DNA of 63,945 nt, the filler included, from Hausera hauseri (Eukaryota): the NCBI GenBank assembly GCA_046269625.1. It is 11 parts of 11 records of this genome, joined end to end, with 100 filler letters (N's around TTAATTAATTAA, not from the genome) between each part and the next. Parts side by side here need not be neighbours in the genome. Positions count along the whole stretch, not along the records: positions 8,774 to 15,257 come from JBJURY010094765.1; 10 more parts are not named here. One strand, given 5' to 3'. Positions 7,681 to 15,257 of the stretch are shown here, piece by piece. The notes beneath the pieces are model-generated. The model was not told the DNA's origin. It ran no database searches and saw nothing but the letters and a program-made list of their open reading frames with translations. Position numbers and translations under genes: made by a program. Each line of letters begins with the position of its first letter. The stretch's first letter is position 1.

Positions 7681-8778
7681 TTTGTGACTACTCTTAAAAT
7701 TTAAACAAGACAATTGATAAACTTAAACAACTCCACAAAGAAGTAAAGCGTGATCAGTGCGCTGAAAGTATATTCACTACTTACATTTTTATTTTTACTT
7801 ATATATTTATCTTTGTATTGTGTGATAATATTTTTGTTTCTTATTTGTTATATTGCATCAGTAAGTTAACTAATTAAATAAGTTTTCTCAAAGTAATTCG
7901 GAACGGACCCGACGTACTGTCGGATCGTGGCCCAAGTAAAGATAAATAACAGAGTCAACTAAACATTACTCAAATAAAGTGAAAATAAAAAACGACGTTG
8001 TCCCCGACATATTACCCATAGGGTAGAAAGGTAAGATTTTCTGAAGAATATATACATGCTCATAGATTATTAATTGTCTCATATTTGTTCACCCGTTAAT
8101 TTATTCCGTCACATAATATTAAATAAGCCTCTCCCATAAAAATTGTCGGAGACTGAACAGTTCATCATAGTTGTATAGTTGCGTTACTTGAAAATGTGTT
8201 TGGAAAGTGTGTAATATTTCAGTGCGATATGTTAGTTGTATTTGAAAGGAACAAGACGAGATGAAATTTAAATTAAATTAAATACTGTTCACGACGAAGA
8301 AAGTCCTTGGTACAATGAATTTAAAGGTTGAAAAAATCAAGAAAGCCGCGTGAGATCAGCCGGAAAGTAACAAAACACCCAAAGTAAATCAGTTAGAATT
8401 TTAAAGTTTTCTCAAATCAGCATCTAATAGAAATCATTCAAAATGGAAAAATCACAACCAGAGAACTCCAGCGCGTCTTAAACGTCAGCATAAGTACTCT
8501 TGACACATTGCTGACAGAACACGTGTTAAAATGATATCGGAGACCGTCACAATGGATGGTACACCACCCTCTCTGTTTTCATGAGTCGAAAAGTATATCA
8601 CAAGAGTGGAAACTCTCTGAAGAGATTAGCTCAAGAAAAACACCAGCATCAAAAACGTACTTAAAAGTCATGANNNNNNNNNNNNNNNNNNNNNNNNNNN
8701 NNNNNNNNNNNNNNNNNTTAATTAATTAANNNNNNNNNNNNNNNNNNNNNNNNNNNNNNNNNNNNNNNNNNNNAAATA

Positions 8779-8799
8779 GTGTGTGTGTGTGTGTGTGTG
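8779..8799. repeat. (GT)n microsatellite
   Basis: Direct reading of the sequence. Confidence 0.95.
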
Positions 8800-8959
8800 A
8801 AATTTTTTCTACCCTATGAGTCATTCGCGAACCACATTGATTTCCCTCAGCAGGGGGTTTGGCCCAGTGTCCTCCTTTCCTATTACCGCCGTATAATCTC
8901 ACGATGGCGATGCGTACATACAATCAGAAATGAATAATGGAGGAGAGGGAGGACAGAAC

Positions 8960-9420
8960 TATTGACAATACAGAGAACAAAGGAAAAGTGACAAAATGGA
9001 AAATTTCACATTAACCTAGGAGATAAATTTTGGGTGTTAAAAAGAACAGAAAGACGAAATCGATGGCCGATAGGTGAAATAATTCAGACATTTCCGAGTA
9101 AAGATGGGTCCGTGCGAGTTGTTGAATTCTCACAGAATGGGAGGTATATCGGCAACTTATCAATAAAATTGGTAGAATTGAAAATTGATCAGATGAATGG
9201 GAAAAATTAGAAACAACAACCAGACGATAAGGAAATTTAGAATTGAACGAACAAGTTCGCCGGATTACCCCAAGGAGGGAGAAATTGTGAATCTTGGTAG
9301 GTTAGTTGGGTAATCCAACCAATACCCAATCGGAAATACCGGTGTAAATATAAAAAATGTACATATGAGTTAAAGTGTGAATGTTGTATATGTTCGAATG
9401 TGAATGTCGAAATTATATAT
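8960..9420 (+). mobile_element. BEL/Pao LTR retrotransposon 3' end (integrase C-terminal domain, PPT, start of 3' LTR)
   Basis: LGDKFWV...RNRWPIGEIIQTFPSKDGSVRVVE matches the BEL GD.V...R..WPLG.I...PG.DG.VR.V domain. PPT aaggagggagaaa at 9272-9284, then TGTGA at 9286; interrupted by the Tc1 at 9422. Confidence 0.72.
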
Positions 9421-9421
9421 A

Positions 9422-10458
9422 AAATACTGGATAAAATAAGCACATCCTACGTAAAAGAGAAATTTGTGAACGTCCTTAAATACATTGCGAAATATTGGTA
9501 AAAAGGCTGACATTAGTAAAGATTTGAGAGAAAGGGTAATAACACTGCATTTGTCTGGCAAATTTCCGAGAGAAATATCTGCAATATGAGCACTTTCATA
9601 ACAAAGTATTAGGTTTTATGCAATGTTATGCATTTTCTCATATTTAGAAATACATTGATTGTGGCTCAATTGAATCAAATCGAGGAAACACGGGAAGGAA
9701 ATTGAAATTAACACTCAGGGCAATGAGACATCTCAAGCTATGTGTTCGCACGAAACCCTTCTTGTGAGATTGCATGGTATAGTAATATTGCAGTGTGTCC
9801 CAGAACAGTAAGGAGATATTTACACAAGCTGAAAATAAAATGTTGAAGGGCTATGAAGAAACCTCTCCTAAATGCATTGCAGATAATGAGAAGGGTCCAA
9901 TGGGCTAGGAGGTTGCAGATGAAACCTACCAGTTTCTGGAAGAAATGTAAACAATCGATGAATTCATTATAGTATTTCAGTGTTTTAGAAAATGAGCTTT
10001 ATGGCACATTACAAGGTCCATTTAGGGGGCATGGCAGGGCATTTTTTCATGATGATGGTGCCTCTTGCCATCAGTGAAAAGTTGTTCAACAGAGATGTCA
10101 GCAGATAGGAATTAGAAGGCTAAATTGGGTGGGACAGTCACCAGACTGTAATCCCATAGAGAATATTTGGGCTTTTATGAAGAGAAAAATAAGGCAAAGA
10201 ATCCCTCACACAGCATCTGACTTGAAAAATGCCATTCAGGAGATTTGCAGTTTAGAAATATCACTGCAGTATTGTTAGAGTCTATACTTCTCAATGCCTT
10301 CAAGACTTTCCCTAGTCATGAAGAAGAAAGGATTCTCTACTAGATACTAGATATTGTATGAGCTGCCACATTTTGTGTTTGATATTTGTTCAATTTCTAC
10401 CTTGACTTGAGTTTTACTGTAATCTGAGGGAGTATGCTTATTATTTTGTCCAGTACTG
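9422..10458 (+). mobile_element. Internally deleted Tc1-like element
   Basis: TA-flanked degenerate TIRs (aaatactggataaaataag / ttattttgtccagtactg). Motifs GKKADISKDLRERV, FHDDGASCH, WVGQSPDCNPIENIW and MPSRL...KGFSTRY*. Confidence 0.85.
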
Positions 10459-10714
10459 TAGTAGAGGCGGAAACGGCCTTATTCATCCTCTGAACGAACC
10501 ATCAACCACGTTTACAAAACTTTCAAAATCAAAAAATTTTTTTTAACGAAATATCCCAAAAATATATTATACATCTTCGAACAAGAATTATGTTAATCCG
10601 AAGTCTGCATAAACATTAAGTTTTGGAGTTGCCAAATAGAAGTAAATATATATAAAGTCTTTTTGATTTCGTCACTGATTTATTAAATATTTCAACAATA
10701 ACAAATACACATAA

Positions 10715-11956
10715 AGGGTGGACCATCTATCATTTTCTTTTTTAATTAGTCATAATTTGGACATAGACAACACTTATGCCATTCTGTTTTTTTAAACGTT
10801 AATTTGTTGGCCTCCAATTTACTAATATGGATCGATATATGATTGAACAACGTTTTGAAATATTAAAAATTTACTTTGAAAGTATCTGCTGTGTGGCACA
10901 ATGCGTGCAAAGATTGAAGGCAATTTTCTGTCTCGTAAATGCACCTTCTACGGCTTATGCGAAGTACTTTGAAGAAAGTTCGTACACCAACACGTGCGCC
11001 TCCGGTTCGTTCGACCGAAAATATTGCTGTTGTAGTTCAGAGTGTGCGTGAAAATCTTGGAACGTCGACTCGCCATCGTTCTCAAGAACTGAACATTTCC
11101 CGGACTTCCCTGAGACGTATTTTGCATAAAGACCTTGATATGACAGCCTAAAAAGTACAGTTAGTTCAGGAGTTGAAGCCAAGAGACCATCCGATGTGTG
11201 CTCGGTTCGCTGAATGGGATGGAGTTCAAGAAAATCCCGAATTTTATCGAAAATTATGTTTTCCGATGAAGCTCATTTTCATCTGGGTGGCTATGTAAAC
11301 AAACAAAAAATATCGCATCTGGGGCTCAGAAAATCCACATGTTGTCGTGAAGAAGCCAATGCAACTATTGGAAGTGACTGTTTGGTGCGTATATTGGTCT
11401 GGAGGCATCATTGGATCTTATTCCATTGAAAATGAGGATGGAGACACGTTTACTGTGAATGACGAACGTTATCGACGCATGATAAGTATTTGGATTTGAC
11501 TGACATCTGGTTTCAACAGGATGGTGCTCCGTGTCACAATAGAAAAACCAACAATAGAACTTCTGCACACCAATTTCGAAAACCGTTTAATCAGTCGTTT
11601 CGGCAATGTCAATTGGCCACCAAGAAGCTGCGATCTTACGCCGTTAGACTATTATTTGTGAGGTGCCGTTAAGGACAAGTGCTACGCCGACAATCCAGAG
11701 ACTATTGATGCTCTTAAAAGCAATATCCAAATTGCCATTGCTGAAGTAGAGCTTCATACAGTCTAAAATGTATTAAAAATTAGATCTATTGGATGGACTA
11801 CTGTGAGGCTAATCGAGGCAGCCATTTGATTGAAATTGTATTCCATAAATGATAGGAAGAATTACTCTTTTAGATAAAAATATAATCATTGAATTATATT
11901 TATTGGTCTTTTATTTACGGCTCTTTTTAAAAAGAAAATCGTTAATGGCCCACCCT
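10715..11956 (+). mobile_element. Tc1/mariner DD41D (rosa-like) element, pseudogenised
   Basis: TIRs agggtggaccatctatcattttcttttt / aaaaagaaaatcgttaatggcccaccct. Motifs FSDEAHFHLGGYVNKQ and WFQQDGA...NWPPRSCDLTPLD, with 41 residues between the 2nd and 3rd Asp after frameshift correction. Confidence 0.92.
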
Positions 11957-12518
11957 ATGTATGCTGTTGTCTTCTCCTCGGCTAATGTAAGCACCACAGT
12001 AACCATTAGTTTACAATTCCAACAAAACTTCTATAGTACATGATAAACCGATGAGCGGTAATGTTATGATTGGCGTTTTACCCTAATACATAAAGATACC
12101 CTATCTACTCAATACATGACCGGTATTTTTATAAAGTCTCTCTTCCTCATTTTTTTACCATATTAGACTAATATGCGGTCGTTAGATCGTCACTGCTCAT
12201 GTTAGCTGCTGAAATTAGCGACCACATTATTAAGTTGGTATTTTTCAGTCCGGTAAGACAGTGACGATATAGTAGCGAGCAAAAGACACAAGAATTTGCA
12301 CAAGAGGTATACTGAATAAGTACCGTTATTTTTATGTTGGGAAAACTTGTTATGAAAATATCACTCACAAATGTTTTCAAACGTTGTATATGTATTTTAT
12401 CATGAAAAAGCCCATTCTTTTATTTCCTTTCAGTTTTTATATTGAATTATGCGCATTAAACCTTATTTTATTATACTGTATCTAGTATGTCACTGTTTCC
12501 AATGTGTTCATAAAACAG

Positions 12519-13623
12519 GTATGGAATCGACAGTCAAACTGCAGCACTTATTGGTGTAATGCAAGCAATGGTTTCATTCGTCGAAACGGATGACGATCAA
12601 TTGCGGGTAGTTGTTGCAGGAATTCACAATTTCTACTTTCTGATCAAAGAACATTTAATACTCGTTGCAGTTAGCAAATCTTCCTTTATTCCTGGCCAGT
12701 TACGTGTTTTTCTCAGTTACCTATACAATCAGATTTTAAGTATACTGACATTTCGGTCTATATCAAAGGCTTTTGAAAAGCAGCCATGTTTAGACCTTCG
12801 TCGTTTATTGATTGGTACTGATAGATATCTCAATGGGATGATTGAATTCATGGAAAAAGATATGGGCCCTTTGTTATATTCAGTTACATGTATACCCATG
12901 CAAGCGACTATTCGACAAACGCTTCTTTCAGCAATTACTCAGGCTATTAAAATAAACGACTTCGTCTTTGCCATTTTACTACTTGACGAAAAACTGGTTG
13001 GTGTGATAAGACGAAAGGACCAACAACCGCACCCAATGGACCTTCATCTAATTCTTAATCTGATTCGAAATTCGTCTTATTTCAAAACTCAGATCTGCTG
13101 GCTACCGATTTGTTTACCTAAATTTGATGTTGACGGATTTTTCTACGCACACATATCGTATTTAACTCCCCGTGTTTCACTCGTTCTACTTACCGTGAAT
13201 CCAGACCAATTTGACGTTTTGCAACAAGTTCGGAATTCCATTTGTTCATCAATGGAAAGTACGGGGATATTGGATCGTATCACGACCATTTACACCGTGG
13301 AAGAACTATTACAAAGCTATAAATTGACCGAGGTCAAGCATTTTGTTTATAAAATGAGAAACGCCAGCCAATGTATATCTTACTCGAGTTCATCACATTC
13401 TGACGTTGCAAATGAAAAATTTATTTTGAGCCATTATGTTCGATTGCATAGTTTCATTCATAAGTCAGAAAGGTCTGCTAGACTTGTATACCAATGTACA
13501 GATTCAGAAGTCTTTTTCGCATGGCAAACTGTCAATTTCGAGTTATATGCTACCTTAAATACTGTTAATCACAAACGGAGAATAATGGAAATCGTCAATA
13601 AATTGCTGGATAAATTGAAAAAA
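12519..13623 (+). CDS. MON1: Vacuolar fusion protein MON1 segment (part 1 of chimeric ORF 12519..15257)
   Basis: Follows a cag| acceptor at 12516-12518. Motifs (R)YG....LIGVMQAMVSFV, LILVAVS, YLYNQILSILT, DLRRLL.GT, HPMDLHLILNL, WLPICLPKFD.DGFFYAHISYL and FELYA. The last few MON1 residues and the stop are absent. Confidence 0.93.
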
Positions 13624-14640
13624 GCAAATATTCCATATTTTAAATTTATTGAAACCAATTGTTCGTTTGTCGGTCGACGAATTCGGGATTCGTTACAGTG
13701 TTTATCGAGTTTGGGATATGGTTATGATTTATCGGCAGAAAAAAACAGCGTGTTTTATTGGAACAATTTTGGTATTCTCCATTTCCATTTGAACAAGCAT
13801 AATCTTGGAATTATGTATCTCAATCGTTGTTTGGCACTGACGGAAATAGCTGGAAAGAAAGGGAAAAATACGTTAAACAATTGCACAGATTTTGGTCTTA
13901 CTCGGCCGTATGACGTTATTTACAATCTCGGTGTTCAGTTGCTTTTTGCTAATAAGCCAATTGATGATTTTGATTTGCTTCTTGAAGTTGTCAGCGTTTA
14001 CCCGAAGAATCCCAGACTTTGGCTTCGATTGGCGGAATGTTGTATCAAGGCATATCGAAATGATGATAACACAGAATCGAAGCCTAAGTGTGTTCAAACA
14101 GTTTATGGAAATTCTTCATTCAAGAGAATAGTATTAGGAAATAATACGAAAGAATTTAAAAGAACTCTTGAAGGTGTTGCTGCTATGCCAACTCCTAGCT
14201 TAGAATTTGGATCTTTGTGCATACGCACAGGGTTATTCCTTCTTCCGCGTCGATCTAATTTAGATTCTCAAAATCTTGTGGAGTGGTACAGTCAGCAGTG
14301 CTTGACTGTAAACCCAGGTGGATGTATTAAAGGTACGGATATTTTACACCTTGAGTCATCATTGCTATTGAGTGGTGCTTATATTTCCCTGTCGTTGAAT
14401 AATTATGTGGAAACAATAAGACTTTGTGAAACGTTAATGCAACAGCCTATTCTTTCTCCATATTATCAGTTTTTAGCAAGGATGTATTTGGGTGAAGCTA
14501 TGACAATGGTTAACAGTTATGCAAATGCCAGCATGTATTTGAGGTGTGTTCATACATTGAAACTTCGAGCATCGGAATTAAACCCATCGGAAAACCACCA
14601 GTGGCAATATTCATATGCGTCCGTAAAAATCGATGATAAT
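13624..14640 (+). CDS. CNOT10: CCR4-NOT subunit 10 internal TPR segment (part 2 of chimeric ORF)
   Basis: YWNNFGILHF...KHNLG, YNLGVQLL, YPKNPRLWLRLAECCI, SLEFGSLCIRTGLFLLP, AYISLSL and FLARMYLGEA correspond to the CNOT10 motifs FWNNLGCIHF..KHNLG, NPRLWLRLAECCI, SMEFA..CLRNAL.LLP and LGHLYAAEA. Confidence 0.92.
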
Positions 14641-14649
14641 CTCGAAGAT

Positions 14650-15257
14650 AAGTCAAACGAGATGGTGGAAAACGATGTGCTATCACAGCAAAGTCATATA
14701 AAATCACTTAAGATAACTCAAATGAAAAAGGACCTATCAGTTAGTCAGAATTATTTGACTCAGGCTGTGGAAATTCTTGGACAATCTCTAGTTTTAGCAG
14801 TATCATCAAATCGCTACAAAGTTGCAAGCTATGCTGCTGAACAAATGATTGATTTTTTTGGTACGATGGATCCTATAATTAGTGTTCATATGCTGAATTT
14901 GTTGCAAAGTTGTGTCACTGGAAAGAGGCTTAGAAAAATCTTGCTGAGCACCCAACGGAAAGCATCTATGGGTGCCTTAGCTGCGTTGGTTCTTCAGCAC
15001 AAATTCTTGAAGGAAAGGTCAAAATATTATGAATGTGGTCTTATTAATTCCCCGTTGTATCATTTTGTTTTGGATCAACTTAATTCTGATTTTAACGCGT
15101 GGAGAATCACGAATGTTTCTCTTAACCAGCAAGAAATTTTGAAAGATCTTTCGAACGTTTCTAACGGATTTTGTATTCTTCAACATTCCCCTAATTATAA
15201 ATATCTCTACTGTGCATTTATTGATCCGAAACCAAAAACTGCTACAACACCGAAAGT
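14650..15257 (+). CDS. CFAP46: Cilia/flagella-associated protein 46 C-terminal-region segment (part 3 of chimeric ORF; runs into gap)
   Basis: QNYLTQAVEILGQSL.LA...VASYAAEQMIDFFGTMDP...LNLLQSC...LAALV.Q...AW..TNV...ILQHSP...YLY.AFI.PKPK parallels CFAP46 Q.YLAQASEVL.QCL..A...A..ASLEMVEC.G.LDP...LALSQSC...LAALL.LQ...AW..L.V...L.LS.D...LY.A...KPK. Confidence 0.85.

What the first reader, a model, noticed from the sequence alone, without database searches (positions are those of the whole stretch)
12519..15257. Stop-free, intronless chimeric ORF fusing MON1, CNOT10 and CFAP46 fragments
Seen: more than 900 uninterrupted codons in which a MON1 segment (lacking its extreme C-terminus) runs in frame into an internal CNOT10 segment at ~13624 (AAAG|CAAAT), then into a CFAP46 segment at ~14650 (GAAG|ATAAG). 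A cag| acceptor precedes it. The three proteins act in unrelated pathways (Rab7 GEF, CCR4-NOT, ciliary central pair), and nearly all other coding DNA in the window is decayed. Inference: the exon-end-like AAG junctions and absence of introns suggest exons of three genes were spliced together and fixed in DNA through an RNA step (gene capture plus retroposition, or cDNA template switching). This could be a young chimeric gene; an assembly or transcript artefact is the alternative.
Basis: partly seen in the sequence, partly recalled or inferred. Interest (0 to 1): 0.85.

Follow-up and report, generated by a model that had tools for sequence, protein, structure and literature searches.

The report
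Three-gene intronless fragment mosaic, multi-copy
One stop-free stretch of 912 codons really does string together intron-less pieces of MON1, CNOT10 and CFAP46, but it looks like a recently amplified, unconstrained mosaic of processed gene fragments in transposon-rich DNA of a flatworm-like animal, not a new working gene.

Summary
Window 12520-15255 (+) is 912 codons without a stop (chance about 1e-28; the other five frames have 48-68 stops). It matches MON1 (human 172-542 of 555), CNOT10 (231-594) and CFAP46 (2025-2225) in one frame.

No protein among 1.84 billion representatives matches more than one of the three parts.

The pieces lack introns that relatives have: one in MON1 after ..QAIK(I/V)N, and one widely shared in CNOT10 at aa 465/466. 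This fits an RNA or cDNA origin.

The "young gene" reading is not supported:
- The cag|G "acceptor" is built from MON1's own codons (..TCC AGG TAT..).
- In the best-holding run, depth climbs from 6.5 in the flank to 30-35, 129, 343 and over 600 along the ORF. Other upstream contexts join at 12516, 13603 and 14833, and copies 10-12% diverged also exist.
- 11 of 12 differences to three closely related organisms change the protein. Two are stop codons.

The DNA upstream is a transposon graveyard.

Best reading (0.55): a tripartite processed pseudogene or fragment mosaic, recently amplified. Whether the depth reflects DNA copy number or RNA could not be settled.

The parts
12516..13623 (+). MON1-derived segment. 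It corresponds to human MON1A 172-542 and lacks the first ~170 aa and the last ~13 aa (..EEERLFILxxPTF). It is continuous where relatives have an intron (after ..QAIKIN, about 12957/12958).
   Evidence: The X1 loose end before 12516 continues as MON1 coding ..GKPVFS|RYG.
12511..12519 (+). Upstream stop TAA (12511-13) and the 'cag|G' motif. This is either a true 3' splice site or a mid-codon breakpoint. The letters C AG G are MON1's own codons TC[C AG]G.
   Evidence: The relative P0154 is continuous across ..FSRYG.. on the same contig that leaves a downstream intron unspliced.
13603..13645 (+). Junction zone 1 (MON1 to CNOT10). Homology places the switch at 13623/24-13645. The read graph shows a second upstream context joining at 13603.
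13624..14575 (+). CNOT10-derived internal segment (human 231 to about 594). It keeps all invariant residues (NPRLWLRLAECC, SLEF, C..R). It is continuous across a widely shared animal intron site at aa 465/466 (13914/13915).
13969..14260 (+). Sub-fragment that also exists as at least 5 variant contigs about 12% diverged, with their own flanks, in X1 (depth up to 51) and X2. Those copies have lost invariant CNOT10 residues (W>L, G>R, L>P, R>Q).
14575..14628 (+). Junction zone 2, a linker of unassigned origin between the CNOT10 and CFAP46 homology.
14629..15255 (+). CFAP46-derived segment (2025-2225 of 2641). The part 14833-15255 alone scores E 1.7e-12. The part 14629-14832 adds about 25 bits only when joined to it. 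The piece ends at ..AAAG|gt.
14833..14833 (+). Point where a different upstream context (..LFHTNDIAIR|AAEQ..) joins in X1, X2 and X4. Depth rises from 129 to 343 in X1.
9049..9141 (+). Remnant of a DUF5641 domain (I read it from my own knowledge as the tail of a Pao/BEL-type LTR-retrotransposon integrase).
   Evidence: E 5e-5.
10135..10224 (+). Remnant of a Tc1-like DDE_3 transposase.
10701..11970 (+). Decayed mariner-like element with 45-nt inverted ends (10701-10745 and 11926-11970) and a DUF4817 helix-turn-helix remnant.

Best explanation
The ORF is one copy of a tripartite, intron-less mosaic of host-gene fragments. It joins MON1 172-542, CNOT10 231-594 and CFAP46 from about 2025 onward.

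The most likely origin is from mRNAs: reverse transcription with two template switches, or end-joining of cDNA pieces. This is the known route to chimeric processed pseudogenes.

The mosaic lies in transposon-rich DNA of a flatworm-like animal. In the source organism it exists in several structural forms that share the 3' part and differ at the 5' side. By depth these amount to roughly 5, 20 and over 50 copies of the MON1, CNOT10 and CFAP46 parts.

The frame is open because the amplified copies are very young, not because the protein is selected.

Shown: the three homologies in one open frame; the absence of two introns that relatives have; the junctions present in read-derived contigs; the depth steps and other upstream contexts; and the non-synonymous and stop-rich differences to closely related organisms.

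Inferred: that depth means DNA copy number; that the origin was through RNA; and that the 12516 boundary is a breakpoint and not a splice site.
For: 1. Homology and open frame.

2. No protein in 1.84e9 representatives, or in the 5.8e9-protein index, matches more than one segment. The fusion is therefore not a conserved architecture.

3. Missing introns.
- The relatives P0140 (77% identical) and P0154 (71%) both break right after ..QAIK(I/V)N. P0154 reads into VSRSIV.. and then a stop. The window is continuous there.
- At least 12 ORF fragments from genomic contigs of other animals start their CNOT10 similarity at aa 466, inside longer ORFs. This points to a shared intron that the window lacks.

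4. Read evidence.
- In X1 the flank 11925-12545 has depth 6.5. The MON1 part has 30-35, 13603-14747 has 128.8 with 0 differences, 14841-15190 has 342.7, and the last bin has 840.
- Other upstream contexts join at 12516 (MON1 coding), 13603 and 14833.
- One variant has a 2-nt deletion at 12862.
- 13 of the 41 contigs laid are under 90% alike.
- X2-X4 show uniform low depth (2.7-8.8).

5. Of the 12 differences to X2, X3 and X4, 11 change the protein. Two are stops: 13588 GAA>TAA and 13675 CGA>TGA. This rejects omega <= 0.3 at p < 0.003 and fits neutrality.

6. Upstream are three decayed transposons and no MON1 exon.

7. Precedent exists for three-part chimeras formed by double template jumps (PMC2104539).
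Against: - The kind of run X1 is not on record. If it holds RNA, the depth steps are expression levels and not copy number, and the context before 12516 is simply the spliced upstream exon. The cag|G site fits a normal acceptor.
- No poly(A) tail, target-site duplication or LINE tail could be checked, because the piece ends at 15257.
- The parental genes were not seen, so neither their intron positions nor the age of the copy is measured directly.
- The window's CNOT10 part keeps every invariant residue, and both joins are in frame (1 in 9 by chance).
- Junction 1 is not bridged by 31 or more letters on both sides in any listed contig.
- The differences in X2-X4 come from contigs of depth 2.7-7, and these could be paralogues or include errors.
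Confidence: 0.55

Rival explanations
1. A real, transcribed chimeric gene. The flank before 12519 is a true intron of a MON1-derived gene, and its large last exon has acquired CNOT10 and CFAP46 cDNA pieces in frame. The high depth in X1 reflects RNA (or processed copies of its mRNA), and the gene is young or lineage-specific.
For: The 912-codon frame is open with both joins in frame. A cag|G follows a moderately T-rich tract. X1 holds a contig that joins upstream MON1 coding sequence exactly at this point, at about 4 times the depth of the flank. All invariant CNOT10 residues are kept. In X1, everything genic is deep and the non-genic flank is shallow.
Against: Eleven of 12 differences to sister organisms are non-synonymous, and two are stops next to junction 1. 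The relative P0154 has no intron at the FSR|YG site, although the same contig keeps another intron unspliced. No run is on record as RNA. Contig totals of 0.6-1.6 Gb per run look like genomic DNA. The depth never falls again after the CNOT10 part, so no normal CNOT10 molecule with this sequence is visible. Decayed copies exist.
Confidence: 0.2
2. The mosaic is cargo of a mobile element and spreads with it. Candidates are an LTR or non-LTR retroelement that transduced host mRNA pieces (like maize Bs1 or human SVA), or a DNA transposon of the Pack-TIR or Helitron type. The open frame would then be kept on the master copy.
For: Depth rises stepwise toward the 3' end, as in 5'-truncated retroelement families. 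Copies range from identical to more than 10% diverged, in at least two organisms. The 292-nt CNOT10 piece sits in a second repeated context with conserved flanks. The neighbourhood is transposon-rich and includes a DUF5641 remnant that I read as a Pao/BEL integrase tail.
Against: No terminal repeats bracket the ORF inside the piece. The immediate 5' flank is single-copy (6.5x), so it is not element sequence. Each depth step has one dominant other context, not the many different insertion flanks expected of transposition. The junction was not found in the viral or metagenome collections. The 3' end cannot be seen.
Confidence: 0.15
3. Artefact: cDNA or RNA carried into the DNA library, or a graph mis-join through a short shared word near 13603-13632, produced a contig that does not exist as one genomic molecule.
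For: The piece is a short (6.5 kb) stretch that starts at a (GT)n run and ends in the deepest repeat. Depth over the genic parts resembles expression. The words LLDKLKK(AN) at 13603-13629 resemble both the MON1 C-terminus and the flatworm CNOT10 motif ..KQLIKAN.
Against: X1 holds 97% of the sampled 31-mers. One contig without any difference spans 13603-14747, so junction 2 is in the reads. The flank-to-MON1 join is in a contig (11925-12545). X2, from another organism, has 13430-13626 running over 13603, and 14296-14634. A library artefact would not recur in another study with its own substitutions.
Confidence: 0.08

Closest known systems
Tripartite chimeric retropseudogenes formed by double template switching during LINE reverse transcription (Gogvadze et al. 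2007, PMC2104539; mammalian U6-L1-type chimeras)
   Same: Copies of three different transcripts are fused directly, in the same orientation and without introns. They are usually non-functional and can be transcribed.
   Different: The known cases mostly join small RNAs, SINE or LINE copies, and they end in a poly(A) tail flanked by target-site duplications. Here all three parts are internal pieces of protein-coding mRNAs, joined in frame and apparently amplified. The poly(A) tail and target-site duplication could not be checked.
'Tinkering loci' / exon-shuffling hotspots in Drosophila affinis (Weisman 2025, bioRxiv 10.1101/2025.10.28.685065)
   Same: These are transposon-rich regions that collect fragments of unlinked genes and build composite ORFs. 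They duplicate fragments with similar boundaries and differ between very close species.
   Different: There the favoured mechanism is ectopic DNA recombination, with parental intron or intergenic flanks often retained, and retroposition is thought unlikely. Here the fragments span intron sites without introns, which favours an RNA step. The animal group is also different.
Maize Bs1 LTR retrotransposon with transduced pieces of three host genes (cited from my own knowledge; see also reviews PMC7264820 and PMC13317346 listed, not read)
   Same: Spliced pieces of three cellular genes are fused into one reading frame and multiplied as part of a repeat.
   Different: In Bs1 the pieces sit between LTRs. 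No LTRs or other termini bracket this ORF in the visible 6.5 kb.
Amplified chimeric gene families such as Sdic or Stellate in Drosophila (from my own knowledge)
   Same: A recent fusion of parts of unrelated genes, one of them an axoneme-related gene, is followed by multiplication into near-identical copies.
   Different: Those families are expressed and selected. Here the only substitution data argue against constraint, and expression is unknown.

Membership tests
Chimeric processed pseudogene (RT template switching) | Two or more different transcripts fused head-to-tail in one orientation | tested here: met
   MON1, CNOT10 and CFAP46 blocks lie on one strand and in one frame.
Chimeric processed pseudogene (RT template switching) | Parts lack the introns of the parental genes | tested here: inconclusive
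   Introns seen in relatives' MON1 (after QAIK[IV]N) and at a widely shared CNOT10 site (aa 465/466) are absent here. The parental genes of this species were not available.
Chimeric processed pseudogene (RT template switching) | 3' poly(A) tail and flanking target-site duplications | not testable with these tools
   The piece ends at 15257, inside the CFAP46 part.
Chimeric processed pseudogene (RT template switching) | No selective constraint on the coding frame | tested here: met
   Eleven of 12 differences are non-synonymous, 2 of them stops. There is a copy with a 2-nt deletion. Caveat: the contigs compared are of low depth and may be paralogous.
Young functional chimeric (retro)gene | Intact ORF with start and regulatory context | tested here: inconclusive
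   The frame is open, but no upstream exon lies within 3.7 kb. The first ATG is at 12559. The status of the acceptor is ambiguous.
Young functional chimeric (retro)gene | Purifying selection (dN/dS below 1) between species | tested here: not met
   Omega <= 0.3 is rejected at p < 0.003, and the X2 copy carries stops.
Young functional chimeric (retro)gene | Expression as one spliced transcript | not tested
   No run is on record as RNA, and the single read-laying run was used on contigs.
Transposon-captured gene fragments (Pack-TIR, Helitron, LTR transduction) | Captured DNA bracketed by the element's termini | tested here: not met
   No inverted or direct terminal repeats surround 12516-15257. 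The 5' flank is single-copy in X1. The 3' side cannot be seen, so this holds for the visible part only.
Transposon-captured gene fragments (Pack-TIR, Helitron, LTR transduction) | Multiple copies of differing age | tested here: inconclusive
   The depth steps and the 13 contigs under 90% alike fit this, if X1 is DNA.
MON1 / CNOT10 / CFAP46 orthologue (a normal gene of any one family) | Full-length architecture of that family | tested here: not met
   MON1 lacks about 170 N-terminal and about 13 C-terminal residues. CNOT10 lacks residues 1-230 and those beyond about 594. Only about 200 residues of the roughly 2600 of CFAP46 are present.

The most novel reading that the evidence does not exclude
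The composite MON1-CNOT10-CFAP46 frame is the maintained coding sequence of a recently expanding unit. That unit would be either an amplified lineage-specific chimeric gene family (Sdic-like, possibly on a supernumerary or otherwise amplified chromosome region) or an animal retroelement carrying a host-derived three-gene ORF (Bs1-like). The decayed copies would then be its dead offspring.
Probability: 0.15. Interest if true: 0.7.

Novelty: new member of a known kind. Interest (0 to 1): 0.4.

Why it matters
If the best reading is right, this is a clean animal example of a three-part, in-frame fusion of processed gene fragments that was then multiplied. Such sequences are the raw material for exon shuffling, but this one is most likely not yet (or never) a gene.

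It also matters for annotation. Gene predictors would call this a 900+ aa protein with MON1 longin domains and TPR repeats, and orthology pipelines could mistake it for the species' MON1 or CNOT10.

If instead the frame is expressed and maintained, it would be a rare case caught close to birth: a multi-copy chimeric gene joining a Rab7-GEF subunit, a CCR4-NOT subunit and an axonemal protein.

Tried and rejected
No earlier notes and no source contig or organism name could be obtained.
- Three word-index protein searches were run: the whole ORF, a junction-spanning 450 aa, and a 163-aa CNOT10 core. The full HMMER scan was also run. None found a protein spanning two segments, and none found a close relative of the CNOT10 or CFAP46 parts. 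Only MON1 has relatives at 71-77% identity.
- The three other upstream contexts from X1 (30-nt consensus each) were searched in the window. None is present, so no upstream MON1 exon or alternative 5' piece lies in 8774-12518. tblastn with MON1 and CNOT10 orthologues agreed.
- Rfam found nothing in the piece.
- The junction-1 word was searched in the metagenome and viral contig collections, with 0 hits. This gives no support for a viral carrier, but a blank means little.
- A conserved fusion protein was considered and rejected, because no multi-segment hit exists.
- A reassigned stop code or polycistron was rejected, because the other frames and the flanks are full of stops.
- An antisense gene was considered to explain why 9 of 13 differences fall on codon position 1. 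It was rejected because the antisense frames have 48-62 stops. The bias fits the fact that 11 of the 13 changed sites are G or C in the window and that GC is highest at codon position 1.
- The ~12%-diverged 13969-14260 copies were considered as the true CNOT10 exon. This was rejected because they have lost invariant residues that the window keeps.
- Structure prediction, complex prediction and the ESM Atlas search were not run. The families are already clear from sequence.
Full report
**1. What is there**

The piece 8774-15257 contains one long open frame on the + strand. Upstream it is closed by TAA at 12511-13, and it runs without a stop to the piece's end.

From 12520 to 15255 there are 912 sense codons. 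At the local base composition a stop is expected every 15 codons or so, which gives a chance of about 1e-28. The other five frames of the same DNA hold 48-68 stops. GC is highest at codon position 1 in every sub-segment.

**2. The three homologies**

- Pfam finds the three longin domains of the FUZ/MON1/HPS1 family. The first is truncated at profile position 32.
- Against solved structures, aa 1-368 align end to end with human MON1A 172-542 of 555 (E 6.5e-64).
- 13627-14652 aligns with human CNOT10 231-454 and 494-573 (E 8.5e-40).
- 14629-15255 aligns with CFAP46 2025-2225 of 2641 (E 3.9e-20).
- 14833-15255 alone still gives E 1.7e-12. The 14545-14832 part alone gives nothing, but it adds about 25 bits when joined.

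Alignment with orthologues (A1) shows MON1 homology running to ..FELYATLNTVNHKRRIMEIVNKLLDKLKK (13623). The usual last 13 residues or so (..EEERLFILxxPTF) are missing. CNOT10 homology (A2; tblastn) starts at about ANIPYFKFIETNCSFVGRR (13624-13645) and ends near 14541-14575.

The second (about 14650) probably lies 20-75 nt too far right.

**3. Is the fusion known or conserved?**

No. The word-index searches and the exhaustive HMMER scan of 1.84 billion representatives returned only proteins that match a single segment.

The closest MON1 relatives are P0140 (77% identical, UniParc only) and P0154 (71%, a 1075-nt Logan contig). The best CNOT10 hit is from the flatworm Macrostomum lignano (42%). 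Other good hits are trematodes, molluscs and a nemertean. The source is therefore a poorly sampled, flatworm-like animal. I could not name it.

**4. Intron-less state**

Both close MON1 relatives break immediately after ..QAIK(I/V)N. P0154 reads on into VSRSIV.. and a stop, as an unspliced intron would. P0140 has a 6-residue insert there. The window is continuous at that point (about 12957/58).

In the CNOT10 part, at least 12 ORF fragments from genomic contigs of other animals begin their similarity exactly at aa 466 (13915), well inside longer ORFs. This is the signature of a shared intron site, and the window is continuous across it.

By general knowledge, 2.7 kb of coding sequence from three genes without a single intron is unexpected in an intron-rich animal. 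This favours an RNA or cDNA origin. It is not proof, because the parental genes of this species were not available.

**5. The 5' edge**

Run X1 contains a contig that matches the window from 12516 onward but continues upstream differently. Joined to the window, that contig reads ..AAG CCT GTT TTT TCC AGG TAT GGA = ..KPVFSRYG, which is the MON1 sequence of the relatives (..GKPIFSRYG).

The letters C-AG-G are thus MON1's own codons. Two readings remain:
- (a) A real intron ends here, with the upstream exon ending in CAG like the intron.
- (b) This is a mid-codon breakpoint of this copy.

P0154 is continuous across FSRYG on the same contig that leaves the next intron unspliced. That speaks for (b) in that relative.

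No MON1 exon lies in the 3.7 kb upstream. That DNA is a stack of decayed transposons:
- a DUF5641 remnant at 9049-9141, which from my own knowledge I read as a Pao/BEL integrase tail;
- a Tc1-like DDE_3 remnant at 10135-10224;
- a mariner-like element at 10701-11970 with 45-nt inverted ends.

**6. Read evidence**

Five runs from five organisms and five studies hold the stretch. X1 holds 97% of the sampled words and is probably the source organism. X2 holds 44%. All runs were served as contigs, and none is on record as RNA.

In X1 the exact-match contigs have these depths:

| Region | Depth |
|---|---|
| flank 11925-12545 | 6.5 |
| 12516-12861 | 30.4 |
| 12832-13524 | 35.4 |
| 13603-14747 | 128.8 (0 differences over 1145 nt) |
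| 14841-15190 | 342.7 |
| last bin | 840 |

At 15191 there is a C/T split of about 383 to 259.

Other upstream contexts join at 12516, 13603 and 14833. No drop in depth is seen along the way. The 14833 context (..LFHTNDIAIR|AAEQMIDFFG) is the same in X1, X2 and X4.

X1 also has:
- a copy with a 2-nt deletion at 12862 (depth 4.4);
- at least 5 variant contigs of 13969-14260, about 12% diverged, with their own conserved flanks (also present in X2);
- a diverged copy of 14718-14998;
- overall, 13 of the 41 laid contigs under 90% alike.

X2-X4 show uniform depths of 2.7-8.8.

Junction 2 is bridged by the 1145-nt X1 contig. It is reached by X2's contig 14296-14634. Junction 1 is covered in X1 (every bin has depth and 97% of words are held). 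In X2 it is covered by 13430-13626, which passes 13603 by 24 nt, and by 13612-14088. No listed contig bridges it with 31 or more letters on both sides.

**7. Constraint**

Thirteen single differences were listed: 7 in X2, 3 in X3, 2 in X4 and 1 within X1. Of the 12 between organisms, 11 change the amino acid. Two create stops in X2: 13588 GAA>TAA and 13675 CGA>TGA, on either side of junction 1.

Random substitution in this frame would give 73% non-synonymous, 6% stop and 21% synonymous changes. Omega <= 0.3 is rejected at p < 0.003.

Nine of the 13 fall on codon position 1. Eleven of the 13 changed sites are G or C in the window, and GC is highest at position 1, so this looks like mutation bias and not another frame.

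The ~12%-diverged copies of 13969-14260 have replaced invariant CNOT10 residues (NPRLWLRL>NPRLLFRL, G>R, SLEF>SPEF, C.R>C.Q), whereas the window keeps them. So the window's copy is close to the functional sequence and young, while older relatives of the same fragment have decayed.

The divergence between organisms A and B is about 0.5%. At that level an unconstrained 2.7-kb frame staying open in one lineage is unremarkable.

**8. Interpretation**

The simplest account is a tripartite processed mosaic. Its pieces derive from MON1, CNOT10 and CFAP46 mRNAs and were joined by reverse-transcriptase template switching or by end-joining of cDNAs. Three-part chimeras of this type are documented (PMC2104539).

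The mosaic is probably shared by organisms A and B. In A it was recently amplified in several structural forms that share the 3' part. It evolves without constraint on the protein.

The locus also resembles the transposon-rich 'tinkering loci' of Drosophila affinis, which gather and duplicate gene fragments and create composite ORFs (bioRxiv 10.1101/2025.10.28.685065). There, however, DNA recombination is favoured.

The weak point is the nature of X1. If it contains RNA, the depth steps are expression levels, the context at 12516 is a spliced exon, and the chimeric-gene rival gains ground. Three things argue against that:
- contig totals of 0.6-1.6 Gb per run;
- recurring depths of 3.8-6.5 for single variants;
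- the many diverged copies.

These arguments are not decisive.

**9. Limits**

- The organism is unknown.
- The parental loci were not seen.
- The 3' end, where a poly(A) tail, target-site duplication or intron would show, is outside the piece.
- Read evidence comes from contigs only.

Noticed in passing
window 8781-8800: The piece begins at a (GT)n microsatellite and ends in the deepest-covered repeat. This suggests it is a whole short contig bounded by repeats.
   Followed up: no
window 9049-9141 (+): Remnant matching DUF5641 (E 5e-5). From my own knowledge I take this for the C-terminal tail of a Pao/BEL-type LTR-retrotransposon integrase. No LTR was identified nearby.
   Followed up: partly
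window 9480-10330 (+): Decayed Tc1-like transposase. It has a ..SPDCNPIENIW.. motif and a DDE_3 hit at 10135-10224, and it is broken by stops.
   Followed up: partly
window 10701-11970: Decayed mariner-like element with 45-nt inverted ends (73% complementary) and a DUF4817 helix-turn-helix remnant. It lies directly upstream of the ORF's flank.
   Followed up: partly
window 13969-14260: This 292-nt CNOT10 piece is also found in a second repeated context with its own conserved flanks. At least 5 variants about 12% diverged occur in X1, and one in X2. The nature of that second repeat is unknown.
   Followed up: partly
window 14833: The same alternative upstream sequence (..CATTGCCATTCGA|, reading ..NDIAIR|AAEQ..) joins here in three organisms (X1, X2, X4). 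It may be the true CFAP46 gene or another family member. If it is the true gene, the window's copy is a mosaic of an older and a near-identical CFAP46 part.
   Followed up: partly
window 13603-13629: The residues LLDKLKK(AN) resemble both the MON1 C-terminus (NKLLKWIKK) and the Macrostomum CNOT10 motif (AKQLIKAN). The join may therefore have used a stretch of similarity between the two mRNAs, and its exact position (13602/03 or 13623/24) is open.
   Followed up: partly
window 13430-15255 compared with X2-X4 contigs: Nine of the 13 listed differences fall on codon position 1, and 11 of 13 are at G or C in the window. I read this as mutation bias toward A/T and not as a sign of another reading frame.
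   Followed up: partly
window 15191: A C/T variant (Pro>Leu) is split about 383:259 in X1 at very high depth, and depth nearly doubles just before it. A further unseen context therefore joins near 15160-15190.
   Followed up: no
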